This document shows positions 21,417-64,000 of a stretch of DNA of 64,000 bases, piece by piece. The stretch is taken from the IMG/VR virus record IMGVR_UViG_3300049855_000348, positions 156,490-220,489 of that record; one strand, written 5' to 3'. The position numbers were made by a program, and so were the translations under genes. Position 1 is the stretch's first letter. Every line of letters starts with the position of its first letter. The notes beneath the pieces are model-generated. The model saw only the letters and a program-made list of their open reading frames with translations. It made no database searches and had not been told where the DNA came from.

Positions 21417-22034
21417 ATGCAAACGATCTACGACATCGAAACCATTGCCGTTCTCGATGCCAAGTCGATCAACCGTCGTTCCTTCCGATCTGGACCAGCC
21501 TCACGCATCCTTTCAATTTACGATGACCCTGAGATCCTACGGAAGCGACTTGAAGCGAATGTCCCCTGCCCGCTCAAAATGGCGATTGAAAAAAATGGTT
21601 ACGATCCCGCCAATCCTCCGAAGTTGAAGCGCGGTCATTACATGGATCCGAAGGAGTTGTTCTACCGCACCATGAAAGTTCAGATGGCTGGTGGAATCGA
21701 CAAAGCGGGTCGTGATGGAGAACGTTTCATCGAACTGCTGACCCTGCTGGCGAATGGTTATATGGGTCGCATCATGTTCAAGGATACCGGCTCGATGGCC
21801 AATCTCACTGAAGACATGGTGCAAGAAGCTATCACCAAGTGTGCGATGATCGTCATGCGCTTCAATCCCTGGGACCCCCGCGCCACCAAACCCACTCTCA
21901 ATAACGCTTTCGCCTATTTCACCACGGTTATCCGCAATCGCTTCTATGAAACACTCACTTGCCCATTGGTCGGGTCGGATGTGTTCCTCGAAGATCTCAA
22001 AACCGAAAACCAGTCGATCGGTGATTTGATTTGA
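21417..22034 (+). CDS. T4 gp55-like late sigma factor
   Basis: EDMVQEAITKC...RFNP...NAFAYFTTVIRNRF matches the gp55/sigma region 2 pattern. Confidence 0.8.
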   Translation: MQTIYDIETIAVLDAKSINRRSFRSGPASRILSIYDDPEILRKRLEANVPCPLKMAIEKNGYDPANPPKLKRGHYMDPKELFYRTMKVQMAGGIDKAGRDGERFIELLTLLANGYMGRIMFKDTGSMANLTEDMVQEAITKCAMIVMRFNPWDPRATKPTLNNAFAYFTTVIRNRFYETLTCPLVGSDVFLEDLKTENQSIGDLI

Positions 22035-38596: not shown

Positions 38597-38932
38597 TCAG
38601 GCCGAAGCAGCAGGCTCCGGGCACTTGAGACCACCGAACGGGAAGATCATGTCTTGGAAGTCAAATCGCTTCGTCTCCACCACACCCATCAACGGGATCT
38701 TGTAGACCACCGCATAACGATCGTTCGTCACGATGTCATCGTAGGTCAAATCAACGACCAGCTTCGCACGATCGACGAAGCGATCATAGGGGCCATACTC
38801 ACGAAGCCGGTTGCTGGTGTAGCGCCAATACCGCAGGAACGACAGACAGCCACCGTTCGGCGTAGGACGGCAAAGGACCTTCGCTTCGGGCGTCGGAGCC
38901 TCTGGGGCTGGGAAGATCGGAAACAGGGCCAT
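38597..38932 (-). CDS. Putative late/structural small protein
   Basis: MALFPIFPAPE...; TATCTA 5 nt upstream. Confidence 0.6.
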   Translation of the reverse strand: MALFPIFPAPEAPTPEAKVLCRPTPNGGCLSFLRYWRYTSNRLREYGPYDRFVDRAKLVVDLTYDDIVTNDRYAVVYKIPLMGVVETKRFDFQDMIFPFGGLKCPEPAASA

Positions 38933-38967
38933 GTGTATAGATAGTTTCAGAGCATCCAAGGATACCC

Positions 38968-40557
38968 ATGATTGAGAAAATCGGTCGTTCTGGCGTCGAA
39001 CTCCACCAAGTCCGCAAGCACGTGGATGCCGATGGAAACGACATCGGACCACGTCGGAAGCCCAACAACGCCTATCTGGACGGCAAGGTGAAGACCCGTG
39101 GCGGACGGGCTCCCCAGGGCTGCACCCGCATGGTCAGCCACGGCTTCGGACCCAGCAAGCTCAACGTCAACAACGACGTGCCCAAATTGTCGAAGCAGCA
39201 GAGGACTCTGCTGCTGGCGATCGATGCAGGAGCCACCACGCTGACGACCGCTGCCTTGAAGGTGGCCGACTCCCTGGTCAAGCTGGACCTTGTGATCTGG
39301 AGCGATTCCAAGAACAACTTCGTCTGTATGGTCGAAGGTCGTCGCGTCGCTGAACTCCTGAGGGAAAACAAAAAGTGAGTGCGAGCCACGCCAAACGCAA
39401 AGTCTCACGCTTAGACTTCGAGAAGATGTTCCCAGAATACGACACTGATTTCTGGGAAGGCATTCTGTTGTTCGACGACATGAACGAGGCTTTCGTTGGA
39501 ATTGCCCAGCAGTTCACCAACGAAACGGTTGCGGTCTACGACTACGATCTCTGCCTCAAGTGCCTCATGAAGAGTGGCATGTCTGAGGAAGATGCCCTCG
39601 AATGGTTTGTGACAAACACCCAGGGTTCGTGGATCGGTGAGCGTACGCCGATGATCCTCTACCAACGTGGCGACAAGAAGAAAAAATGAAAACCACTGAA
39701 CTCATCCTGTGCAAGACAGTCACCACTGAGTCCTTCCCTGATCGTGGGTGGATCGGCCTCGTCATTCCCGGCGAGAACGGCAAAGAGTTGGCCGGTCTCT
39801 ACACCCGCTCGGAACTGTACCGGGAGGTGAAGAAGATCATGGACAAGTACGGCGAGGACAAGGTCCGCATGACCGTCTCGAAGTTCAAGGTCCCTGAGGG
39901 CTACCAACTGATGTTCGCTCCGAGCCGTGATGCCTATGATGGCACGCACGCTCGCAAGCTCATCGAGAAGCACCTGTATGGGTGAATCGTGACGCATCAC
40001 GATCATCGAAAGAACCTCAGAGATCTTTCTCGTGATGACCCAATGCTGACCCTGATCGAGCAGCCGTCGGCTATACAGGCCGACGGCTCTGTGCAGATAG
40101 GGGATGGGCTAGTTCAATCCCAACCTGCTGACCTTACATACAATACCGACAAATTCGGCAACGCCATAAAGGCTGCTGTGTTCGTCGCTGAGGTGGAGAA
40201 CACACAACCAGCATTGCCAGCCGAACCAGGACCAGTCCGGCTCGCAGTAAATCGCACTCATCTGAAAGGTCTCCTGTGCCTGCCCGAGTCATCCCTATCA
40301 CCAGACGAATCTGGAATCGAAAAAAGCTCATAGAACGAATGACTCTGACCAAGCGCGACGACAAGGACGGCATCGTCATCGATGTCAGTCCCGGGGCAGT
40401 GAACTCCATACTCATTGTTGAGACCATGGTGCTGCTGGAGCAATGCCAGAAGGACAAGGTCTCAGTCGAGATCCACACCCACGACGATACCACCTATCGT
40501 TCGTTCAAATACGTGGGTATGGAGAAACTGGCCGTCCTGAAGCGGATGCCGAACTAA
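38968..40557 (+). other. Small hypothetical ORFs (38968-39378, 39375-39689, 39686-39985, 39989-40333, ~40339-40557)
   Basis: Coupled ORFs; 39375-39689 has the common phage pattern AVYDY....MS.E.A.EW..N..G. Confidence 0.65.
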
Positions 40558-43800: not shown

Positions 43801-44758
43801 GGTCGAAGAGAAGGCCGACGTGCTGCGCCTGGAAGGCATCTCGATTTCCAATGGTACGGTCTATATTCGCTTCAACCGTGATGACATCTTCAAAGCCATT
43901 GCTGTGCGTGGCATCTTCAAGACCAAGTGGGTGCTGCGCAACATCGCCTGGATCACCATCACCAACGTTTCGTACGACGAGAACAACATTCCGATCTCTG
44001 TGGAATACGATGCTCAGAACGTGCGTGATGCGATTACCATGTCGACACTGCTGGAAGCAGATAAACGCTGCCGTCAGGTCTACATCCCTTGTGCCACGAA
44101 GTATGGCTGGATCGATGTTGGCCAGACCAACATCCACACCGAGGCCATTCCTCAGAACGATAGTCCACGTTTCGGCTTCTTTGAACTCGACAACATCAAA
44201 GGCATCGACACGGCTCTGTTGATCGATGGTCCGGTCTACAATGCCTTCAAACCGGTCGACATCGACTATCGCTTCCTGGAGAAGTACGTCGACTCAACGG
44301 ATCTCGAAGAGATCAAATCAGTGGCCATCGTTCGTCACATCGTCACCGGCGCACGTCGCGTGTTCGTTGGTGTCTATCGTGAGGCCAACGGCGGCGGTGG
44401 AGTCACTGCTCTCAACAACGAGATCACGCTCGGCACATTGACTGATCAGGACGTTCTGTTCATCAACGATTCGCTGCTGGATTCGTCCTGGGTGCTGGAC
44501 TTCGCTGGTGTCATGACCACGGCACCTGATGGTGGCGTTGGTGACTTCGGTGACTCGAAGCTCATGCTGGCCGGTTACTGGTATGCCGGTCACTCGCTGG
44601 AGGACCGTGCTGGATCCTTCACACGCTTCCGCCCTGACACTGCTCAGTTCAACAGTCCGACCAAGAATGCCGACTTCTATCGTCTCGGCGATGTACCGAT
44701 GTCCTTCCTCTACCGTGGCAACACTCTGCTGTGGTCTGATCACACGAGACCGGCGTGA
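40889..44758 (+). CDS. Large putative virion structural protein (baseplate/tail-like)
   Basis: 1289 aa, acidic and beta-rich composition, in the late operon; no family recognised. Confidence 0.7.
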   Translation: MSLDRPLFSTSSVYSLIELNEVITRYAQNDEQMKAVAESLEQILTTVSAGQILSPADLQAAVDAIYDAGSPLARAYIVSPPSRSLQEIANLMTISPLSDLIEGTKLNPTAWMPILRVFSMLKGMIYLVENGPSYDADPVFVKDGSFFFTSITDGNSPEGHLLCSENGTVLEVGGPIYRVLPDGTDAITLIEFMLRRLEQQRLRQIYRLGCFEASVDAKYDSGSSYDFIDKVFTTGAGPEFNQRFPCGYTAAGELLFLRSQAGKYRGADLNLFRPGYSAQSGVEDRVIIGESTVQTPMGLFHIPQCVVRWDHLLTDEDRQPNADGDPVVFVGLRFKVSMLKRTSYANGVAEPDAIVDVGTGDGVVLMKRNAFGSEIPNYPTTLTGTQAEKFPAVAAEGVEHGRVIGFIQKDGLNTFAQFFQVSLDVAIVKQHGRAFFEQGVGYAAGQVDEIGKLGELGTDIDVAPWRAFGTGPRHVLEVVQTDATLAGEGFVLDVDQGVLKREEKTSDTAEWEVILPIGLSLMKNQKPFSLGNLNGCSTRFTDAWAIRQVTSVQKSLNTVIFDDGNGEPEAFPQDFIGAEVTFWHADRTSSVTTIVERVGDRLARIPTDVLAKVTAGDVVTIDRRKPSSSFDGAYEREAGITNFVDLRLLVRRMVDTEVVPSSEGLLSPSPSPAQPWTALVRSKPASLVLAAMAPFADNVAAIGSKLRWHYAQQFIALASQRQDMVDITGTTAELQSYLLRWVQNYEANKNHEWIVGEGSIIHWPAKNPVTKVNLRRYSPPILPGVDDGITIEEVAGWGPVPVLTKYLRSGDNQRYPLRIIKPLVFASERSFSIPGHTKLAGSFRFQPEDTWIVDEVITFVLYQTQNRNGLIQEVILGSFDLRWQEASNFSNATGVFRIDDEASYDPTTGFLNINYNQIIDFTVEEAGRLSVTAVYHDLTEVHPIYSFNLAQFGLNVSHLADAKVFSIVDGKVEEKADVLRLEGISISNGTVYIRFNRDDIFKAIAVRGIFKTKWVLRNIAWITITNVSYDENNIPISVEYDAQNVRDAITMSTLLEADKRCRQVYIPCATKYGWIDVGQTNIHTEAIPQNDSPRFGFFELDNIKGIDTALLIDGPVYNAFKPVDIDYRFLEKYVDSTDLEEIKSVAIVRHIVTGARRVFVGVYREANGGGGVTALNNEITLGTLTDQDVLFINDSLLDSSWVLDFAGVMTTAPDGGVGDFGDSKLMLAGYWYAGHSLEDRAGSFTRFRPDTAQFNSPTKNADFYRLGDVPMSFLYRGNTLLWSDHTRPA

Positions 44759-44883
44759 CCAGACCGTTTCCTTATATTGAATTGCAATGCAATTTCGCAG
44801 AGATTGTTATCTGTGCTGAGTCTTCATCGTCTTCTAATGCATCAAGTTCATCAAGTTCTTCTTCATCATCGAGTAATCCATAA
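44755..44883 (+). CDS. 42-aa Cys-motif + poly-Ser peptide
   Basis: GTG overlaps the upstream TGA; MTRPFPYIELQCNFAEIVICAESSSSSNASSSSSSSSSSSNP; similar to the 63759 ORF. Confidence 0.6.
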   Translation: MTRPFPYIELQCNFAEIVICAESSSSSNASSSSSSSSSSSNP

Positions 44884-44895
44884 AGTGTAATTTTC

Positions 44896-47229
44896 TTATG
44901 ATAACATCTTGGCTAGCTGTTCATCCGACGGCATCTTGTTGACGTTGAGTGGTGTCACTCGTGGTCCAACTGAGATATGTTGGTCACCGATGCGAACCTT
45001 GCGACCGTTGCCGATGTAGGCGGTAGCTGAACCAGTGCTGTGATCGGTTGCCCAAGACAGCGTCCGCTTCACAGCCTTCTCTACAGCACGGCGAGCCGCA
45101 GCCATCTTGGGGTTGCGAACCACTGCTGGCTTGCGGGCAGACTGGAAATGTACGTCCTTCGAGAGTTTCCCGACAGGGTTCTGTTTCGAGATGGATTGCG
45201 CTGGTGCTGAATTCTGTTGTGAAGTCGGAAGATCATAGTTCCGACCGATGATCATCTCGTCGACCTTGTCCCAATCTGGGTGAGGCGACTGACCGGTGAT
45301 GTTGTGAAATCTTACGAACTGTTCATCAGCGTCATCAGCGTCACTGCGCTTGGCGACATACTCAGTCTTCCACATCTCTTTCAGATGGCGATTGTAGTTG
45401 AGGATGTCGCATGCCTCGATCAGTCGCGGCAGGTCCTTGCTGATGTTGACATCGAAGTTGGCAAACGAACCTTCCATCATCACCACGTAACGCTTCTCAA
45501 ACAGTTCGGCCATGCCGTTGATCATGTCATCCAACTGGTGATCGTAGAAGCCTTCGGCACAGGTGCCGATCATGATCGCCTTGGCAGCTTCGTAGACTGG
45601 GCTGTCCTGGAGCTTCTTCAATTCTGTTGGCTTGATGGCAGCCGACTCCTCGCCGGCCTTCATCGAGTCACGAACCTTCAAAGCCTCGGTCACACCACGT
45701 TGAAAGTGGGGAATGCCATGACGACGTTTCACTTGGGCATAGAATTCGTTAGCAGCCATCCAAACAGAGACGTGTCCCCATTCGGTCTTTGGCTCGGTCC
45801 AATGCCAGTGGATCGTACCGAACAACTCCTTCAGGCCACGGCTGACATGAGGTGCGGTGTTGACCACATGATCGAGATCAATCTCAGAAGCCTGTCCGTA
45901 TGCCTTGAGACGACGATGAAGCTCGATCAGCACATCGCGCCACACAGCGGCACGTGGGTCGATTCCACGGATCGGCTTCCACTCGCTTCTTGGCTTCACA
46001 TCATGCGCCAGCTTGGCAATGTGACTGACACCATCGTCGAGTGTCTGATCACGTCCAATGCTGTAATCGATCACACCGCCTTCGGTGTAAGCAGACACCC
46101 CGGTCGTTGCTCTGATATGTTGGCCTTCCTGGCGATGTTTTGGCTTGCCAGGAACTTCTCCCTTGTCTGTGAACTTGATGCTGGTCGACACTGCCCGTCC
46201 ACGCTTGGTGATGGCCACGCGAGGCATGCTCAGGTTGACCTTGCCGGTGGTTGGAAGTGGATTGGTGAAGGCTTGAATGCCGCCGTGAACTGCACCCAAG
46301 CGAATGATCTGATCACGTGGATCGATGGCGTTGATGACACGACTGATGACCTTGCGTTCACTACGCTCTGGGTTCCAGACTGAAGGATTATATTCGCCCT
46401 TCTTCTGTTGAGCGGTTTGGAACACGTCGATGATGTCGAAAGCATCGGAACGCATGAAGAATGCTTGTTCTGGTTCACCGTGGTAGACCACGGCATCCTC
46501 GGGTCCCTTGGCAGTGTCGATCACGACACTGATTCCAGCCTTCAGGAAGCGAGCACGCTGATCATTGTGGTTGAGAACACGCTTGGCGAATAGCTTGTAA
46601 CCGTTGACCGTGTTGGCCAAATCAAAGCCTGATTGAGAGGCAAAGAAGAACGCCTTCGGCACCGTCACGGGATGTGGCGACACTTTGGAAGCAGTCATCT
46701 CCCAGATGTCTTGCCAGAATTTTTCGACCGGTACGTCATCTCCCTGCGGAAGGACCTCCATCACATTGAGGATCTTCAACGCAGCGTCTTTGGTAAGAGT
46801 CTGAAGATCGAGTACCTTAGCGTTCGGTCGTAGTTTGATGACGCGCAGGTACCGAGAGTTGCCGGCGTAAGGAATACCGGCCTGCTCACTGATCACGAAT
46901 TCGAGCGGGTAGGTGTAGATGGCAGCCGGGTCAGAGTGGTTGGGCTTGGTCCACAGTGTAGTGTCAGGATGAGGGGTACGGGCAGCTTTGAGTCCGAGCT
47001 TTTTACGGTTCGTTGTCCAGTACCGTTCCTCGTAACCCGGTTCTGGACTTCTACCATATTGCGAGCCTACCATTCGCTTGTCATCGGTCGACGAGGCGAA
47101 GTTGGTGAACTGCACGAACAGGTCTTTGCGATGTGCCTGCGGCGTGTACTTGGCGACGAACTCACGCCAGCCCTTGGTGGACACATCAGAGACCAGAACC
47201 TCAGTGACGAGTTGATTGTAGAGATCCAT
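44896..47229 (-). CDS. Putative virion-packaged protein with an ART-like domain (paralogue A)
   Basis: KPNHSDPAAIYTYP...YLRVIKL...VVID.AK....V.Y.GEPEQA; N-terminal LVTE. Confidence 0.7.
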   Translation of the reverse strand: MDLYNQLVTEVLVSDVSTKGWREFVAKYTPQAHRKDLFVQFTNFASSTDDKRMVGSQYGRSPEPGYEERYWTTNRKKLGLKAARTPHPDTTLWTKPNHSDPAAIYTYPLEFVISEQAGIPYAGNSRYLRVIKLRPNAKVLDLQTLTKDAALKILNVMEVLPQGDDVPVEKFWQDIWEMTASKVSPHPVTVPKAFFFASQSGFDLANTVNGYKLFAKRVLNHNDQRARFLKAGISVVIDTAKGPEDAVVYHGEPEQAFFMRSDAFDIIDVFQTAQQKKGEYNPSVWNPERSERKVISRVINAIDPRDQIIRLGAVHGGIQAFTNPLPTTGKVNLSMPRVAITKRGRAVSTSIKFTDKGEVPGKPKHRQEGQHIRATTGVSAYTEGGVIDYSIGRDQTLDDGVSHIAKLAHDVKPRSEWKPIRGIDPRAAVWRDVLIELHRRLKAYGQASEIDLDHVVNTAPHVSRGLKELFGTIHWHWTEPKTEWGHVSVWMAANEFYAQVKRRHGIPHFQRGVTEALKVRDSMKAGEESAAIKPTELKKLQDSPVYEAAKAIMIGTCAEGFYDHQLDDMINGMAELFEKRYVVMMEGSFANFDVNISKDLPRLIEACDILNYNRHLKEMWKTEYVAKRSDADDADEQFVRFHNITGQSPHPDWDKVDEMIIGRNYDLPTSQQNSAPAQSISKQNPVGKLSKDVHFQSARKPAVVRNPKMAAARRAVEKAVKRTLSWATDHSTGSATAYIGNGRKVRIGDQHISVGPRVTPLNVNKMPSDEQLAKMLS

Positions 47230-48107
47230 CAGAACTCGCCGAAGAGGTCATCGACTGACTCGGCCAGCGTCTCACGCTTGGCGACCGAACCAGCACTGCG
47301 GATGAGGTTGATGACCTTCTCGGCCCGGTCACCCACCTGCAAGCGCCACGCCGTGCGCTGGAGGCTGTTGGCTGCCCTGGGATAGTCGAAGCGTTCCAAG
47401 TGATCCCGGGCATCCAGGTTGGCGAAGCCGGTCGGCCCGAGGTTGTAGATCAGGTCGGTCACCGCCAACTGGACCTCCTTGGGTTGCTCCTCGAAGGTCT
47501 TCATGACCCGAGGACCAGCCTTCAGGGCATCGGCGACCTTGGCGGCGAACAGAGCCTCGATCTCTTGGTCGGTCAGACGGCGTTGGCCGGTTTTGACGGC
47601 GGTGTAGTTGATGCCCAGGTCGCGCAGGTACCGAGCCGCACCGGGCTGATCCAGGTTGAAACCGACACCAATGGTCCGCTTACCGACCGAGTCTCGGTAG
47701 ACCTTCGCCCGGCGACCCTCGTTGGGGTGGATGAACTCCTTGGCCTCTTCCAGGCTCAGGGATTCCCTTTGGAAGGCCGTATCTGGCCCGGGGGGTGTCT
47801 CGGTAGGGGGCGGCGGGTAAGATGGCTGTGTGGGCTTCTGGTGCGTCGCAGTGGCCGGTTCCTTGGCTTCCACCGGTGGCTGGTAGCTCTCCTTGTTGCC
47901 GAGAGCCTTGGCCGCCAGCAGGCCGAGGAGGACGCCAGTGCTCGCCATGGCGGCACGCTTGGTCCACGGAAGATCGGCCTCGGACACCATAGGAGCGAAT
48001 AGGCTATCGACTGATTGGCTGAGTCCAACCGATTCCTTGACGATTCGGCGGGGTGGCCGGCGCACCTCCGTTTGATGAATCCACAGCGGTTGTGCTTTCG
48101 CAGTCAT
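47229..48107 (-). CDS. GH24 (T4-lysozyme family) muramidase with N-terminal extension
   Basis: E-X8-D-X5-T triad EGRRAKVYRDSVGKRTIGVG; YNLG; W..QVGDRA; start at ATG 48107. Confidence 0.88.
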   Translation of the reverse strand: MTAKAQPLWIHQTEVRRPPRRIVKESVGLSQSVDSLFAPMVSEADLPWTKRAAMASTGVLLGLLAAKALGNKESYQPPVEAKEPATATHQKPTQPSYPPPPTETPPGPDTAFQRESLSLEEAKEFIHPNEGRRAKVYRDSVGKRTIGVGFNLDQPGAARYLRDLGINYTAVKTGQRRLTDQEIEALFAAKVADALKAGPRVMKTFEEQPKEVQLAVTDLIYNLGPTGFANLDARDHLERFDYPRAANSLQRTAWRLQVGDRAEKVINLIRSAGSVAKRETLAESVDDLFGEF

Positions 48108-48112
48108 GCATC

Positions 48113-48118
48113 TATCTA
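48113..48118. promoter_or_regulatory. Bidirectional putative late promoter hexamer TATCTA/TAGATA
   Basis: 4 nt from ATG 48123 (+) and 5 nt from ATG 48107 (-). Confidence 0.55.
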
Positions 48119-48122
48119 AGTC

Positions 48123-49820
48123 ATGCACCGCGTTGATCTGACCGACCTTGCCAGGATCTCTGAAGCTCACTACTCGGATGTCTTCGGTGCAGCGATGCGG
48201 CGGTTCCACGACAAGTACAAGGACGCCGGTCCCGAGTTCTTCGTGAATTTCAACCCGGTGGTCAGCGATCCCCGGGACAAGACCATCCTTGGCCAGCAGA
48301 GCGATATCCCGGCACCCAAGAGCGGGCCGGACGCTGGGCACCCCCTGTTCAAGAAACCCGACCACAGCGACCCGGTGGGCACCTACGTCTACCCTGCTGA
48401 GTACGTCGCCAACCACTGGCATGACCTCCAGTACGGGTCAGACATGGGCAACCTGCGGGTGCTCAAGGTCAACACCGATCCCGAACACACACTGATCCTC
48501 AGCGACATGACGCAGGATCAGTTCCTTGAGGCAATGAAACGCCTCAACCTGGAATTCCATGTCCGTGATCACGGCTGGATCTACACCCGGTCGAAGCGTG
48601 ATGCGATTGCGATCTATGAAGCGATCTTCGAGTGGGAGGCACCGTCGGCACCCCATCACCGGGTGAACTCCTACGGCAAGGTGCTCTTCAAGCTCATCCA
48701 GAACGACTACCGCTTCGAGCCCAACGTGCCCGAGGAGGATGAGGATGCCGATGAGGAGGAGGGCGAGAACTGGAATGCATTCATGGAAACTGGGTTGTCG
48801 AAAGACAGCAAATACTCCTCAGCCGGTGAGTTCAAATACGAAGGTCAATTGAAGGTCCAGCACGTCACTGAACTGACGCAGATCAAGCAGACTCGTCGTC
48901 TGTTGAAGGCCAAGTATGAAGTGGTCATCGACCGGGCCAAGACTCCGCTGGAGGCTACGATCTACCCGTCCGAGCCAGAGCAAGCCGTCTGCCTGACCAA
49001 GCGGTCCTACGAGGTGGTCGACACCTACAAGATTCAGAACGCTGCTCAGGGTGACCAGACCGTCAGACCAGAACGTCTCGACCGTGAGAAGCTGACCAAG
49101 AAGGCTGGGTGGTTGATCGCCAAGACCATGGGTGAGTCGATCACCGAGAACGTCAGCCATTTCTTCAACCGCGAAGGAGTCAACCAGCCCGGTCGAATCA
49201 GGAATCTCCACATCCTGCGGAACTGGATCTCCACCGAACGTGTTGAGCAGCACCCCATCTCGTCATGGGATCCCACTGGTCAGATGACGGCTATCGATGC
49301 CTGGGTAACCACCAAGGGCAACCTGATTGTGGTCGATACAGTTGTCGCCAGGGCCGAGACCGTCGCCGATCCACAGGCCAAAGCACGCACTCATCAGTCA
49401 GTCTCAAAGGCTCGCATCCGTCCCGGTGAGGATCAGCAGGCGATCACTGACAACCTCACCAGCTATGTCGACTCGGCGATGGACAAGTCTGAGCATCGCA
49501 AGTTCGGCGCTCACAACACCATCTCTTTTGCGATCGGTCTGGTCACCGCTGCGGCACAACCAACGTTCATCAGAACCAGGGCGAAAGAGAGCCTGTCAGA
49601 TCTGCCGGCGAAGGTTCAGGAGGCGTTGCACAAGAACAGCGCCACTGCACCCTTCAAGCGGATCACCAACGCTCTGTTGGAAGAGTTCGTGAAAGCAGCC
49701 AAGAAGAAGGTCGCTTTGGTCAAACCACACGCAGATTCAGCAGCGAGTACATCCGCTGGAAATCCTCCGACAGCCACACCAGCGGCACCGGGTGATACTT
49801 CGGCGCATCCAACACCATAA
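48123..49820 (+). CDS. Putative virion-packaged protein with an ART-like domain (paralogue B)
   Basis: KPDHSDPVGTYVYP...NLRVLKV...VVID.AK....I.Y.SEPEQA; N-terminal RISE. Confidence 0.7.
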   Translation: MHRVDLTDLARISEAHYSDVFGAAMRRFHDKYKDAGPEFFVNFNPVVSDPRDKTILGQQSDIPAPKSGPDAGHPLFKKPDHSDPVGTYVYPAEYVANHWHDLQYGSDMGNLRVLKVNTDPEHTLILSDMTQDQFLEAMKRLNLEFHVRDHGWIYTRSKRDAIAIYEAIFEWEAPSAPHHRVNSYGKVLFKLIQNDYRFEPNVPEEDEDADEEEGENWNAFMETGLSKDSKYSSAGEFKYEGQLKVQHVTELTQIKQTRRLLKAKYEVVIDRAKTPLEATIYPSEPEQAVCLTKRSYEVVDTYKIQNAAQGDQTVRPERLDREKLTKKAGWLIAKTMGESITENVSHFFNREGVNQPGRIRNLHILRNWISTERVEQHPISSWDPTGQMTAIDAWVTTKGNLIVVDTVVARAETVADPQAKARTHQSVSKARIRPGEDQQAITDNLTSYVDSAMDKSEHRKFGAHNTISFAIGLVTAAAQPTFIRTRAKESLSDLPAKVQEALHKNSATAPFKRITNALLEEFVKAAKKKVALVKPHADSAASTSAGNPPTATPAAPGDTSAHPTP

Positions 49821-52171
49821 AGCCGAGAGCATCGTTCCAACAGCCGGCGTAGAGGCACCAACGCTTGGCGCACTGGCTTTCAACGAGCCACCAGATGGCT
49901 GACATGCAGTTGTGACGAGCACAGGATGCAATGATCCGATCACGTGGATCCAATTCAGTGCTCAGACCGGTGAAGCCGTTCTGACCGGTGAGTAACTTTA
50001 CACCACCATCGACCATCAGGTGGTAGAAGATGTCGGCGATCTCTGCGCCTTCTGGTCCGTTCTCTTCGCAGTAGCCACGACGAGTCAGATACTCTTCGAT
50101 ATCTGGCTCTCGTTGCGCTTCTGTAAATCCAGGAAGATAGGCACCAAGGACGACGAGACTCATAGCGTCTAATTACGGTGCTGATGCTCGGCGAATAGTC
50201 GCAATTTTTCTTCCGCTTCTCGTTGCATTTTGACTGGGTACCACTTCAGACACTCCGAGCCGAATGACTCTGGCGGAGCCTCCCTGTTCAACCAGTCTTT
50301 GATGTCTTGGTAGTTGCGTGTGGTGTAGTGTGGATTGTTCAACACCTTCTCGTAATCGTTCTCGAAGCATGCCTGAAGAAAGAGATCCTGAGGGATCTGT
50401 CCGAACGCAATCCAGGCAGCGATCCAGTAGTGAAATTCTGGGAGGACCGGAGTCTTCTTCAGAGAATGGATGACGTGGTGGTATTTCACCGTTGGTGTAC
50501 CTTGACCAGATCATCGCGGAGCTTGAACAGTTCACGACGAACTTTGATGCTGGTCCAGAGCACCCACGCTTGAAGCGAGAGAAGGATGCTGGTGATCACC
50601 CATGTGATGGTTGCAAGCACTGGGTGATCATTGGTGAAGAAGGTGAGGCCACCGAGTGCCAACAGAACGGTGGGTGGGAGAGCCTTGATCGTTTCTTTGG
50701 TCACCTGCCAGAACGTTGGGCGCTTAGCTTCACGGATTTCTTTGAGAGCATCTTTGATCAGATTGGCGGCGTTGGTTGCCATGGCTTCTCTCAGTGGACG
50801 ATGGGGGTGACGACGCCAGCCTTCTTGGCTGCGGCCTTCTCTTCACGGGTCATGCGGCGGTAGGAGCCACAACCCGTGCGGACCAGGGTGGGCTTGTTGG
50901 GCAGCCACTTACGGATCTGGCTCTCGTAGTAGGTTTTCGGTGCATTGTGATTCCACGATGCGACACAGGTTCGCTTCTCCTTGTCAATCGTGTGAACCTT
51001 GATCGACCAGATGCCGAGCGTGCTGAGCTTAGTATTGCCCATCTTATACGAATGGCAGTCGTAGACGACGGAATTCTCTTTCAGGCTCTCGAACTTCATA
51101 GAGTCCTCAGTTTTCAGATGGGCTTGTTTGAGATTTCTTTCCTGGTTTCCCATTCTTGATATCTGGATTACAGGTGCAGATACCATTTGGTTTCAAACCT
51201 GGACAGTTGTCATCATGATAAACTGTGACGTGTGTAACAGATCCAGGTTTCAGTAAACCAGCCTTTATGATTTTTTCGATATAGGATTCTTTTGGTTTTT
51301 TACTCACAGTACCTCCAGCAGCGGGATATGGTTTTCGAGGGAGACACGGACCTTCACTGGTCCTTTGGCTTCTTGGTAGAGCTTGAGGAATGTCGCGGCG
51401 AGTCGAGTGGTGACCATGACATGGACACCACCAGCATTGTCGGGCAGCCATTGGTCGACCACATACGCAGCAGCTTTCGCAGCGGCCTTGCCGATATTTG
51501 GCCCTGGGGTGAGAGTTATGGTGAAGGGGGTCACGCCTCGACCCGTTTTGCCTTGGCATTAGACACGCCGTAGTCAACGCATGCCTGTTTGGCCTCGATC
51601 AGAGTTTTTCTGGTCGAATAGCTGGATCCGTTGATGGAAATCACCCAACCTTCTTTTTGCTTCTTGATCAGATATCGGTTCGATCCGATATCTGCACAGT
51701 AGTAAGCACCGTTCACGGTATCCCAATGCGCAGTCCACAGGAACCGTACCGGTGGGTTGAGCAGCTTCTCAGCGTTCGAGATAGCCGTGTGGAAGCCAGG
51801 AAATGCTGCTCCGTTGATATAGGCACGGTGCGAGAAGTTGACGAGTTCTTGCAGGACCTCTCTGGTTTTCTTGTTCATTTGAAGACGATCTCCAGAATGG
51901 TCGGCTTGGGAGTGTAGAGCGGCATCCGAATGGAACCGGGAACCTTTGGTGGGCACCCACCATTGAGTCCTGAGAACTCGGTCGCACACCTCTGTGTTGC
52001 GAGTTTCGGCATCCACAAAGTGACGCTCAGAATCACCACCTTGTGAGGAAGGGGAAAAGAGATCTTCCCCTTCCTGATGGTGCATTCCTTCGTGTGAGAT
52101 TTCATCTCAGGCAGCGAAGCGAGACTCGTGGATCCCTTGGGCAGGTAGTCGACCCGGCAGTGAACCTTCAT
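49720..52171 (-). other. Cluster of small early hypothetical ORFs (49720-50163, 50169-50489, 50486-50782 membrane, 50791-51099, 51107-51307 HDDxC..CxC, 51304-51534, 51531-51878, 51875-52171)
   Basis: Coupled minus-strand ORFs downstream of the 52818 promoter. Confidence 0.6.
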
Positions 52172-52785
52172 GCGTACCACGAGCAGTAGGTCTCGCGGCC
52201 ATCCCACAGGTGGGCGCTCTTGCCGTAGGTGTACTTGGCCGAGTTGCCGATGTGGAAGCTGTCCTGGCTGACCAAGGTGACTTCGATCACCTCGCCTCCG
52301 GTCGATTCGAGATCGGCGGTGACGTAGGCCGACATGCCCGAGCAGCCCTTGGTGATCTTGTAGCCGATGGGCTGGACCAAGAGCTTGGTGCGGCTCTTAC
52401 GACCGACGACCCTGAAGAAGTCGACGTTCGTCTGTTCCCAGCCCCACGAGTGGACGAAGATCGTGCCGTCGGCGTGCTTGCTGCTGTCGATCGCGGCCTT
52501 GGAGGCTTTCTTCTCAGCCTTGTAGGCGGCGACGCGGTTGGCGATGGCGTCGGCATCTTCGAGGAACTTGGTCACGAAGGCATCGCGCTGTTCGACCGTG
52601 CGGAAGTTGTGGAAGAAGTCGGCCTTGTTGCGCTTGCCAAGAAAACCCTTGGCCAGGATGACCTGCTTCCCGCCCCGATCTTCGATCCAGGCGTAGGCCA
52701 CGCCGTGACCCGTCTTCGAGTCGAGCTTGGTGGCGTTCTTGTCAGCCGAGGGGAGGAAGTATTCGCGGGTGAGGGTGATGGCCAT
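52168..52785 (-). CDS. Conserved phage early protein
   Basis: SWGWEQTNVDFFRVV motif; AAGGA RBS. Confidence 0.8.
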   Translation of the reverse strand: MAITLTREYFLPSADKNATKLDSKTGHGVAYAWIEDRGGKQVILAKGFLGKRNKADFFHNFRTVEQRDAFVTKFLEDADAIANRVAAYKAEKKASKAAIDSSKHADGTIFVHSWGWEQTNVDFFRVVGRKSRTKLLVQPIGYKITKGCSGMSAYVTADLESTGGEVIEVTLVSQDSFHIGNSAKYTYGKSAHLWDGRETYCSWYA

Positions 52786-56447: not shown

Positions 56448-56475
56448 AGTATAGCGACCAATTTATCTAAGTCAA
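56448..56475 (-). promoter_or_regulatory. Early promoter with operator
   Basis: TTGACT-TAGATAAATTGGTCGC-TATACT-6 nt-ATG. Confidence 0.85.
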
Positions 56476-63758: not shown

Positions 63759-64000
63759 GTGAGACCAGATCCTTTCATCGATATCGTATGTGGATTTTCT
63801 AAAATCCAGTTGTGTCTCGGTTCTTCGGGTCCGTCATCATCCAGTCTTTTTTCTTCAAGCTCTTCTTCGTCCTCAAGCTCAAGCTCGTCAAGCTCAAGCT
63901 CGTCAAGCTCAAGCTCGTCAAGCTCAAGCTCGTCAAGCTCAAGCTCGTCAAGCTCAAGCTCGTCAAGCTCAAGCTCGTCAAGCTCAAGCTCGTCAAGCTC
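63759..64000 (+). CDS. Cys-motif + poly-Ser protein (5' part; runs off the window)
   Basis: TACATA-5 nt-GTG; MRPDPFIDIVCGFSKIQLCLGSSGPSSSSLFSSSSS... Confidence 0.65.
   Translation, partial: MRPDPFIDIVCGFSKIQLCLGSSGPSSSSLFSSSSSSSSSSSSSSSSSSSSSSSSSSSSSSSSSSSSSSSSSSSSSSSSS
63872..64000 (+). repeat. 15-bp tandem repeat (TCAAGCTCAAGCTCG)n, more than 8 units, encoding poly-Ser
   Basis: Read directly from the sequence. Confidence 0.95.

What the first reader, a model, noticed from the sequence alone, without database searches (positions are those of the whole stretch)
48105..48125. One 6-bp site apparently drives two divergent genes across a 15-bp gap
Seen: CAT-GCATC-TATCTA-AGTC-ATG. The hexamer reads TATCTA on + and TAGATA on -, both fitting the late consensus at the right distance from each ATG. 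There is no room for an RBS in either direction. The same duplex hexamer sits between divergent genes at 38938-38943. Inference: a minimal bidirectional promoter.
Basis: partly seen in the sequence, partly recalled or inferred. Interest (0 to 1): 0.65.

Follow-up and report, generated by a model that had tools for sequence, protein, structure and literature searches.

The report
Shared late promoter hexamer, two leaderless genes
In an uncultured 220-kb T4-like phage, a 15-bp gap between an endolysin gene and a divergent 565-aa gene holds one TATCTA/TAGATA hexamer. It sits at this phage's usual late-promoter distance from both start codons, so it probably acts as a tiny two-way promoter for two mRNAs without leaders. 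No transcript data exist to prove this.

Summary
CAT 48105-48107 and ATG 48123-48125 flank a 15-nt gap with TATCTA at 48113-48118. Both start codons are real: the N-termini are conserved from Met1 in relatives.

Genome-wide, TANNTA lies 4 or 5 nt before an ATG 30 times, against about 6 expected. Other spacings give 0-4. Here the + gene has spacing 4 and the endolysin gene spacing 5.

The hexamer core reads the same on both strands. All 11 homologues of the + gene with readable DNA keep TA(T/C)CTA at spacing 4-5. All 7 readable endolysin starts keep TANNTA at spacing 4-5. Six of those seven genomes share one hexamer across a 14-16 nt gap.

The phage encodes a gp55-like late sigma. Sheath, tube-like, portal-operon and capsid genes carry the same motif. 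Its sigma70-type early promoters place ATG 6 nt after the -10, so leaderless mRNAs are the norm.

Best reading: a -35-less, gp55-type late promoter used in both orientations. It is a new variant of the known bacterial bidirectional promoter. Start sites are inferred, because no RNA data exist.

The parts
48113..48118 (.). Shared hexamer: TATCTA on the + strand, TAGATA on the - strand. Proposed -10-like late promoter element read in both orientations.
   Evidence: It lies 4 nt before ATG 48123 and 5 nt before the minus-strand ATG at 48107. With a position-weight matrix built from non-shared sites, the + orientation ranks 50th and the - orientation 91st of about 441,000 positions.
48108..48122 (.). 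The whole 15-nt intergenic gap, GCATCTATCTAAGTC, with no Shine-Dalgarno sequence on either strand.
   Evidence: The gap is identical in relative L001, whose neighbouring protein is 72% identical, while the flanking codons differ.
47229..48107 (-). Endolysin gene (292 aa): phage lysozyme domain preceded by a Gly/Ala-rich hydrophobic segment. It starts at the hexamer-adjacent ATG.
   Evidence: PF00959 at 9e-9 and phrog_7 endolysin at 3e-13. The N-terminus is conserved from Met1 in six relatives.
48123..49820 (+). Conserved 565-aa gene of unknown function. It is a lone + strand gene between minus-strand genes and is preceded by TATCTAAGTC-ATG.
   Evidence: Twelve homologues at 34-82% identity, N-terminus conserved from Met1. 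No Pfam or PHROG match. TA(T/C)CTA at 4-5 nt is kept in all 11 genomes with readable DNA.
38938..38943 (.). Second copy of the duplex hexamer between divergent genes. It reads TATCTA 5 nt before the minus-strand ATG at 38932, and TAGATAG 24 nt before ATG 38968, which has an AAGGA Shine-Dalgarno sequence.
   Evidence: The layout is conserved in relative L028: CAT-gcgta-TAGATA-N24-ATG.
38597..38932 (-). 111-aa gene that abuts the second hexamer.
   Evidence: An independent gene call in L028 starts at the equivalent CAT.
38968..39378 (+). 136-aa gene downstream of the second hexamer, with a Shine-Dalgarno-bearing leader.
21417..22034 (+). gp55-like late sigma factor (205 aa). It is the candidate reader of the hexamer.
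   Evidence: phrog_234 'late sigma transcription factor' at E 3.7e-6. In the AlphaFold model (pLDDT 71), residues 75-183 match T4 gp55 in the late open complex 7d7c_F at Z 10.1, rmsd 1.9 A over 92 residues. All top hits are sigma region-2 domains.

Best explanation
The window is the last 64 kb of a complete 220,489-bp genome of an uncultured, distantly T4-like myovirus from freshwater sediment.

The phage appears to run two promoter classes, and both place the start codon at the predicted transcription start.

- Early class: a sigma70-type promoter, TTGACttagac-N-GTCGCTATACT, with ATG exactly 6 nt after the -10.
- Late class: a -35-less motif, TAnnTA(A/G)G(C/T)C, that abuts ATG. It corresponds to the last six bases (TAAATA) of the T4 late box TATAAATA, which occupies -13 to -6. 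It is presumably read by the phage's gp55-like sigma bound to host core RNA polymerase.

The conserved positions T1, A2, T5 and A6 are self-complementary, so the hexamer reads the same on both strands. At 48113-48118 the polymerase can bind in either orientation. One orientation starts the endolysin mRNA at or next to A 48107 on the minus strand. The other starts the 565-aa gene's mRNA at or next to A 48123 on the + strand. Both mRNAs would be leaderless, which explains the missing ribosome-binding sites and the 15-nt gap. The two binding modes overlap completely, so they must be mutually exclusive at any instant.

Shown: the sequence, both start codons, the spacing rule and its statistics, conservation across relatives, and the presence of a gp55-like sigma.

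Inferred: that the motif is a promoter, that gp55-like sigma reads it, where the start sites lie, and that both directions fire.
For: 1. Spacing rule. TANNTA-Nk-ATG peaks sharply at k=4 (19 cases, 18 opening ORFs of at least 40 codons) and k=5 (11 cases, 10 such ORFs), against 0-4 at other k and 3.1 +/- 1.9 simulated. The same rule holds in 92 kb of relatives' DNA: k4 12, k5 6, k6 7, others 0-2.

2. Extended motif. Of 39 TANNTA[AG]G copies, 23 are followed by a start codon of a long ORF at 2-3 nt.

3. It acts at the DNA level, not as a ribosome-binding-site substitute. The same motif sits further upstream, followed by a Shine-Dalgarno sequence, before the sheath, tube-like and 629-aa genes (16-24 nt before the ATG) and about 125 nt before the capsid gene. 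It abuts the ATG of the first gene of the portal operon.

4. Both genes always carry it. All 11 readable homologues of the + gene keep TA(T/C)CTA at k4-5, including four where it is not shared. The endolysin keeps TANNTA at k4-5 in 7 of 7 readable genomes, including L003, where it has its own TAAATA.

5. Sharing recurs. One hexamer sits in a 14-16 nt gap in the window, L001, L002 and L016. In L004 and L017 the endolysin shares it with an inserted + gene. It occurs once more in this genome at 81729-81744.

6. Link to the T4 late box. Distant homologues of the + gene (27% identity; L023, L024) carry cATAAATAgggcATG. The T4 box geometry comes from PMC2988020.

7. A gp55-like sigma is present, and there is no Sigma70_r2 protein.

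8. Leaderless design is general. In 16 of 24 early promoters the ATG lies exactly 6 nt after the -10, and this is conserved in relatives.

9. No sigma70-like promoter lies near the pair: one weak match in 44500-52500, 2.4 kb away inside the 777-aa gene, against 2.8 expected. Terminator-like hairpins there are no more frequent than chance.
Against: - No transcription start site or expression data exist. Only DNA runs hold this sequence.
- The minus-orientation flank (TAGATAGATGC) departs from the AG(C/T)C consensus.
- Within this genome the TC middle of the + orientation occurs at the start-proximal spacing only at shared sites. The weaker faces of the other two shared sites score poorly with the position-weight matrix (0.8 and -3.0).
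- The 4-5 nt between hexamer and ATG are G/C-rich. The T4 late review describes an A/T-rich segment there.
- No T4 gp45-family clamp was found, so the T4 activation mechanism may not apply.
- The sequence match of the sigma candidate to gp55 is weak (hhalign E 0.21). The assignment rests on a PHROG profile and on fold.
- Minus-strand early promoters at 52.8-59.5 kb could read through into the endolysin gene.
Confidence: 0.62

Rival explanations
1. The hexamer is a late promoter in one direction only. The other gene is transcribed by read-through from distal promoters. For the endolysin these would be the minus-strand early promoters at about 52.8-59.5 kb, reading antisense through the 565-aa gene. 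The second ATG lies at the favoured spacing only because selection for compactness pushed the genes together.
For: No convincing terminator lies between 50 and 48 kb on the minus strand. The minus-orientation flank and the + orientation's TC middle each deviate from the consensus. In T4, late genes can also be reached from upstream promoters (my own knowledge).
Against: Each gene keeps a TANNTA at 4-5 nt even when it is not next to the other. The endolysin in L003 has its own TAAATA. The + gene in L003, L004, L017 and L018 has its own TATCTA. Compaction alone would not hold the spacing at exactly 4-5 nt on both sides in six genomes whose gap sequences differ. The two-sided pattern is about 20-fold over expectation.
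Confidence: 0.2
2. The motif works at the RNA level rather than as a promoter. It would be an endonuclease processing site that trims longer transcripts to leaderless mRNAs, or a translation-initiation signal replacing the Shine-Dalgarno sequence.
For: It directly abuts start codons. In L004 the stop codon of the upstream gene lies inside the motif, so in co-directional arrays it would be transcribed. The T4 late review warns that primer-extension 5' ends can reflect processing.
Against: Sheath, tube-like and capsid genes carry the motif further upstream together with an ordinary Shine-Dalgarno sequence, so it does not replace one. The + gene is a lone + strand gene. An RNA-level signal would need a transcript that starts antisense inside the endolysin gene, and no promoter-like site was found there. 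The hexamer matches the T4 late -10 box in form and position, and a gp55-like sigma is encoded.
Confidence: 0.1
3. Coincidence: an AT-rich hexamer happens to lie between two closely packed genes and has no function.
For: TAGATA/TATCTA also occurs inside early promoters (for example window 56464, within TTGACTTAGATAAATT...), so the hexamer alone is not diagnostic.
Against: Simulations give 0.11 expected two-sided sites against 2 observed, and about 3 against 19 and 11 for one-sided sites. The 15-nt gap is fully conserved at 72% protein identity, and the hexamer is kept down to 34% identity.
Confidence: 0.03

Closest known systems
Prokaryotic bidirectional promoters with overlapping, pseudo-symmetric -10 elements (Warman et al., bioRxiv 10.1101/2020.01.31.928960; NAR 2026, PMC12825309)
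   Same: One short pseudo-symmetric -10-type element is read on both strands. Divergent starts lie either side of it within 7-25 bp. The two polymerase binding modes exclude each other.
   Different: Those promoters are sigma70 promoters (TATAAT, hexamers offset by 1 bp, start sites usually 18 bp apart), helped by flanking -35 elements, and they usually produce leadered mRNAs. Here the element is a fully self-overlapping TAnnTA with no -35. It is presumably read by a phage gp55-like sigma. The two start codons are only 15-17 bp apart, and both mRNAs would be leaderless, so the whole intergenic region is 14-16 bp.
Bacteriophage T4 late promoters (TATAAATA at -13 to -6, gp55/gp33/gp45; PMC2988020)
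   Same: A short TA-rich box at the -10 position and no conserved -35. A phage-encoded sigma consisting of region 2 only. The motif precedes structural and lysis genes. Late transcripts run in either polarity.
   Different: The consensus is TA(G/A/C)(A/C)TA(A/G)G rather than TATAAATA. The segment downstream of the box is G/C-rich. The start codon follows after 4-5 nt, giving leaderless mRNAs, whereas T4 late mRNAs have leaders with Shine-Dalgarno sequences (my own knowledge). No gp45-family clamp was detected.
The '-10 region adjacent to ORF' leaderless expression pattern of Deinococcus-Thermus (PMC12340547). Leaderless middle and late genes of Thermus phage phiYS40 (Sevostyanova et al. 2007) are recalled from memory only; the paper could not be opened.
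   Same: A -10-type motif at a fixed short distance from the start codon, with no Shine-Dalgarno sequence, producing leaderless mRNA. The early promoters of this phage follow that design exactly, with ATG 6 nt after TATACT.
   Different: That motif is the housekeeping TANNNT. The late motif here is TANNTA, a different class. Sharing of one element by two divergent ORFs is not described in that paper: the words 'divergent' and 'bidirectional' do not occur in it.

Membership tests
Prokaryotic bidirectional promoter (shared pseudo-symmetric -10) | A -10-type element whose key positions are matched on both strands at the same place | tested here: met
   TATCTA / TAGATA at 48113-48118. T1, A2, T5 and A6 are invariant in the 29 training sites, all selected for TANNTA, and are self-complementary.
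Prokaryotic bidirectional promoter (shared pseudo-symmetric -10) | Divergent transcription start sites 7-25 bp apart on either side of the element | not testable with these tools
   No RNA runs hold the sequence. The only proxy is that the two start-codon A's are 16 bp apart (15-17 bp at the other shared sites).
Prokaryotic bidirectional promoter (shared pseudo-symmetric -10) | Mutating the shared element lowers transcription in both directions | not testable with these tools
   This needs reporters or in vitro transcription. The evolutionary proxy is that the hexamer is retained wherever either gene occurs.
T4-type (gp55-dependent) late promoter | A phage-encoded gp55-like sigma | tested here: met
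   Window 21417-22031: phrog_234 at E 3.7e-6. Fold match to gp55 in 7d7c_F at Z 10.1, rmsd 1.9 A over 92 residues, among exclusively sigma region-2 hits. The pairwise profile match to T4 gp55 is weak (E 0.21).
T4-type (gp55-dependent) late promoter | A short box at the -10 position with no conserved -35 element | tested here: met
   Information content is confined to the hexamer, the four bases after it and weakly G-2/C-1. Columns -8 to -3 carry 0.17 bit or less.
T4-type (gp55-dependent) late promoter | Consensus TATAAATA | tested here: not met
   The consensus here is TA[G/A/C][A/C]TA[A/G]G. Only the TA..TA frame of TAAATA is shared. Distant homologues L023 and L024 do carry ATAAATA at the same spacing.
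T4-type (gp55-dependent) late promoter | Precedes late (virion and lysis) genes | tested here: met
   Sheath, tube-like gene, portal operon, capsid gene and endolysin all have it upstream. Many other carriers have unknown function. Timing itself is untested.
T4-type (gp55-dependent) late promoter | Sliding-clamp (gp45) and gp33 co-activation | tested here: inconclusive
   The gp45 family phrog_223 has no match in the genome. gp33 was not searched. The phage has a Pol III alpha-type polymerase and may use another clamp.
Leaderless genes with a -10 adjacent to the ORF | A promoter -10-like motif at a fixed short distance from the start codon and no Shine-Dalgarno sequence | tested here: met
   Spacing 4-5 nt. 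The gap contains no GGAG/AGGA.
Leaderless genes with a -10 adjacent to the ORF | The mRNA 5' end lies at or within a few nt of the start codon | not testable with these tools
   No RNA data.

The most novel reading that the evidence does not exclude
A whole clade of uncultured T4-superfamily jumbo phages expresses much of its genome as leaderless mRNA from two promoter classes. Its late promoter has shrunk to a self-complementary TAnnTA core. A single 6-bp element in a 14-16 bp gap would then be the complete transcriptional and translational control region for two divergent genes. That would be among the smallest bidirectional promoters described, and the first for a gp55-type sigma.
Probability: 0.5. 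Interest if true: 0.7.

Novelty: new variant of a known kind. Interest (0 to 1): 0.55.

Why it matters
If confirmed, this would extend bidirectional promoters, so far described for housekeeping sigma factors and archaeal TATA boxes, to a phage late sigma that needs only a -10-type box.

It would also show how far gene control can be compressed: two genes, about 15 bp, no -35, no leader and no ribosome-binding site.

There are practical consequences too. Gene callers mis-set several starts in this clade: the endolysin start is placed 33 nt too far downstream in L002, L003 and L017, and several early genes were called at GTG three codons upstream of the promoter-aligned ATG. The TAnnTA-N4-5-ATG rule would correct them.

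The element would also be a compact dual-output part for synthetic biology, once the sigma factor and host are known.

Tried and rejected
- Searches of the 'phages' collection gave no match: nucleotide search with 46000-50000, and protein searches with the 565-aa protein and the sigma candidate. No cultured close relative exists. The portal protein is at most 35% identical to that of any cultured phage.
- The search for sequencing runs found only two DNA holders (freshwater sediment and freshwater metagenomes) and no RNA. I therefore did not use read laying, since contigs cannot show 5' ends.
- The 565-aa protein has no Pfam or PHROG family. The ESM Atlas gave only sub-threshold leads (ART-PolyVal, NADAR; score 0.79, TM 0.32 or less), which I do not rely on.
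- I considered a hidden early (sigma70-type) promoter on the minus strand, because ATGACTTAGATA resembles the early TTGACTTAGAC block. No -10 follows at 16-18 nt, and relatives have TCACTTAGA there, so I rejected it.
- My own codon-score gene call put the endolysin start at 47990. Conservation of the upstream peptide overrode it.
- Sigma70_r2 (PF04542) and gp45 (phrog_223) searches of the genome found nothing.
- A profile search of PDB sequences with the sigma alignment gave only chance-level hits. The fold comparison was needed.
- The phiYS40 paper could not be opened.
- The large representative-protein search, complex prediction and RNA-family tools were not needed.
Full report
**What is at the site**

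The 15-nt gap has no Shine-Dalgarno-like run on either strand.

The window is the last 64 kb of a single 220,489-bp contig with direct terminal repeats, rated complete. The contig has 56% GC and comes from a freshwater-sediment metagenome.

It is a phage of the T4 superfamily. It has a T4-type portal (PF07230, 1e-81), a Gp23-type capsid protein, tail sheath, baseplate proteins, UvsX and gp46/47 homologues. It is far from any cultured phage: the portal is at most 35% identical, and there is no nucleotide match.

**The two genes and their starts**

The minus-strand gene is an endolysin (Phage_lysozyme PF00959; phrog_7). The ORF lister extends it to 48422 and my codon score preferred 47990, so I tested the start with relatives.

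The + gene (565 aa, no family match) has 12 homologues at 34-82% identity. Their N-terminus, MHR(V/A)DLT (MDR-DLT in the two most distant), is conserved from Met1. The frame opens only one codon upstream, so ATG 48123 is the start.

For the endolysin, translating from the hexamer-adjacent ATG gives N-termini conserved from Met1. The window and L001 read MTAKAQPLW / MTVKAQPLW. L002, L004, L016 and L017 read MPFKSxAQRxWM, with a variant in L003. The peptide upstream of 47990 (KESxGLSxSVDSLFAPMV) is conserved as well. The endolysin therefore starts at 48107. The refutation 'either gene starts elsewhere' is not met.

**The motif is real and position-specific**

The genome has only 21 copies of TAGATA/TATCTA, and most sit just upstream of start codons. 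Two motif classes emerge from upstream regions.

- Class A is a sigma70-type promoter, gTGTTGACTTAGACnaaanGGTCGCTATACT. Its ATG lies exactly 6 nt after the -10 in 16 of 24 strict matches. That is where transcription should start, so these would be leaderless early genes.
- Class B is TA[G/A/C][A/C]TA[A/G]G[C/T]C abutting ATG.

Class B statistics:

| Pattern | Observed | Comparison |
|---|---|---|
| TANNTA[AG]G in the genome | 39 | 23 followed at 2-3 nt by the start of a long ORF |
| TANNTA-N4-ATG | 19 | 3.1 +/- 1.9 in Markov simulations |
| TANNTA-N5-ATG | 11 | 3.1 +/- 1.9 in Markov simulations |
| Any other spacing, 0-11 | 0-4 | |

At the finding, the + gene has spacing 4 (TATCTAAGTC-ATG, a full match to the extended motif). 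The endolysin has spacing 5 (TAGATAGATGC-ATG, core match with a weaker flank). A position-weight matrix built without the shared sites ranks them 50th and 91st of about 441,000 positions.

**Why a promoter, and why 'late'**

- Recognised virion genes carry the same motif further upstream, together with an ordinary Shine-Dalgarno sequence. Sheath: TAGATAAAC, 24 nt to the ATG, with GGAG. Tube-like gene: TAGATAAAC, with GAGG. Capsid gene: TACATAGAC about 125 nt upstream, just after a terminator hairpin. The portal operon starts with TAGATAGGCC-ATG. A signal that works at variable distance when a Shine-Dalgarno sequence is present, and at a fixed 4-5 nt when none is, behaves like a -10 element and not like a ribosome-binding-site substitute.
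- T4 late promoters are an 8-bp TATAAATA box at -13 to -6 with no -35 (PMC2988020). Its last six bases, TAAATA, fit TANNTA at -11 to -6. That is exactly the spacing-5 geometry if transcription starts at the A of ATG. Distant homologues of the + gene (L023 and L024, 27% identity) carry cATAAATAgggcATG.
- The phage has no Sigma70_r2 protein. It does encode a 205-aa protein (window 21417-22031) that matches the gp55 family phrog_234 (E 3.7e-6). Its model superposes on gp55 in the T4 late open complex (7d7c_F; Z 10.1, rmsd 1.9 A over 92 residues), within a hit list made only of sigma region-2 domains.

**Is one hexamer serving both genes?**

The invariant positions T1, A2, T5 and A6 are self-complementary, so any late hexamer reads as a late hexamer on the other strand.

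Comparative data show that each gene needs such a hexamer.

- All 11 homologues of the + gene with readable DNA keep TA(T/C)CTA at spacing 4-5. This includes L003, L004, L017 and L018, where the upstream neighbour is different and the hexamer is not shared.
- The endolysin keeps TANNTA at spacing 4-5 in all 7 readable genomes. This includes L003, where it has its own TAAATA.

Where the two needs meet, a single hexamer is used.

- Window and L001: an identical 15-nt gap at 72% protein identity, while flanking codons differ.
- L002 and L016: 14-nt gaps with different spacer letters.
- L004 and L017: the endolysin shares the hexamer with an inserted + gene, in gaps of 14 and 16 nt.

Within this genome the complete two-sided pattern occurs twice (window 48105 and genome 81726), against 0.11 expected. 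There are 19 predicted divergent junctions. Another divergent pair uses two separate motifs in a 34-nt gap (genome 91414-91447). Sharing is therefore an option, not a necessity.

TAGATA at 38938-38943 does lie between divergent genes. The minus gene abuts it (TATCTA-N5-ATG). The + gene is 24 nt away and has an AAGGA Shine-Dalgarno sequence, so it would have a short leader. The layout is conserved in relative L028. It is a valid but only half-identical parallel.

**What remains inferred**

No RNA data exist. The promoter function, the reading by the gp55-like sigma, the start sites and the two-way firing are all inferences.

Points against the model:
- The endolysin-side flank is non-consensus.
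- The TC middle of the + orientation occurs at the start-proximal spacing only at shared sites in this genome.
- The spacer is G/C-rich, whereas the T4 late review describes an A/T-rich segment there.
- No gp45-family clamp was found.
- No convincing terminator protects the endolysin gene from read-through from minus-strand early promoters at 52.8-59.5 kb.

Rivals, with my estimates:

| Explanation | Probability |
|---|---|
| Two-way late promoter (best explanation) | 0.62 |
| Promoter in one direction only, plus read-through | 0.2 |
| RNA-level signal (processing or translation) | 0.1 |
| Chance | 0.03 |

**Relation to what is known**

Bacterial bidirectional promoters that arise from -10 symmetry are established. 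They account for 19% of E. coli start sites, which lie most often 18 bp apart, and the two polymerase orientations exclude each other. Leaderless expression from a -10 placed next to the ORF is established in Deinococcus-Thermus.

This site combines both ideas in a phage late promoter of the gp55 type. It has a fully self-overlapping 6-bp core and no -35. The start codons are 15-17 bp apart and both mRNAs would be leaderless. I found no description of this combination. I rate it a new variant of a known kind, of moderate interest. Its value would rise with start-site data, and with evidence that the whole clade runs on leaderless early and late mRNAs.

No step touched restricted material.

Noticed in passing
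window -10 elements at about 5089(-), 5475(-), 52825(-), 54156(-), 56455(-), 59464(-), 60972(+); about 35 copies genome-wide: A highly conserved sigma70-type early promoter, gTGTTGACTTAGACnaaanGGTCGCTATACT, with the ATG exactly 6 nt after the -10 in 16 of 24 strict matches. Early genes would therefore also be leaderless. The promoter is conserved in all relatives' loci. Gene callers often pick a GTG three codons upstream instead.
   Followed up: partly
window 49720-50163 (-) against 48123-49820 (+): A conserved 147-aa minus-strand gene overlaps the 3' end of the 565-aa gene convergently by 101 nt. The same 101-nt overlap is called in L001, L002, L003 and L017, and in the gene tables of the contigs carrying P0006. 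It is only 4 nt in L004, L018 and the contig carrying P0010. The overlapped tail of the 565-aa protein is low-complexity (Pro/Ala/Thr-rich).
   Followed up: no
genome 81729-81744 (outside the window; locus L009:1729-1744): A second complete shared-hexamer junction: CAT-aaacc-TAGATA-agcca-ATG, a 16-nt gap between a 70-aa minus gene and a 203-aa plus gene.
   Followed up: partly
genome 91414-91447 (locus L009:11414-11447): A divergent pair with two separate late motifs back to back in a 34-nt gap: CAT-gacctagtta...tagttagatc-ATG. This is a useful natural contrast to the shared sites.
   Followed up: no
window 56464-56469: This TATCTA copy is not a late hexamer. It is the reverse strand of an early promoter spacer (TTGACTTAGATAAATTGGTCGCTATACT). 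The hexamer alone is therefore not diagnostic; spacing to an ATG is.
   Followed up: yes
genome ends (1-150 and 220340-220489; window about 63850-64000): Both ends carry a tandem 15-nt repeat (TCAAGCTCAAGCTCG)n. It forms the direct terminal repeat, or the assembly overlap, of the contig.
   Followed up: no
genome 124178-136147 (-) (locus L011): A single ORF of about 3,989 aa preceded by TAGGTAAGTC-ATG (late motif, spacing 4). It is probably a giant virion protein. It was not analysed.
   Followed up: no
L004:9430-10003 and L017:3430-4003: In two relatives a roughly 185-aa + gene lies between the endolysin and the 565-aa gene, and the TATCTAA... motif is present twice, once before each + gene. 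In L004 the TAA stop of the inserted gene lies inside the second motif. This looks like a gene insertion that duplicated the promoter.
   Followed up: partly
L019:3900-3960 and L020:3900-3960: In the two most distant close relatives, a perfect palindrome ATAGCGACccgGTCGCTAT lies about 40 nt upstream of the 565-aa gene's homologue. It is the early-promoter GTCGCTAT block and its reverse complement. It could be a terminator or a pair of back-to-back -10 regions.
   Followed up: no
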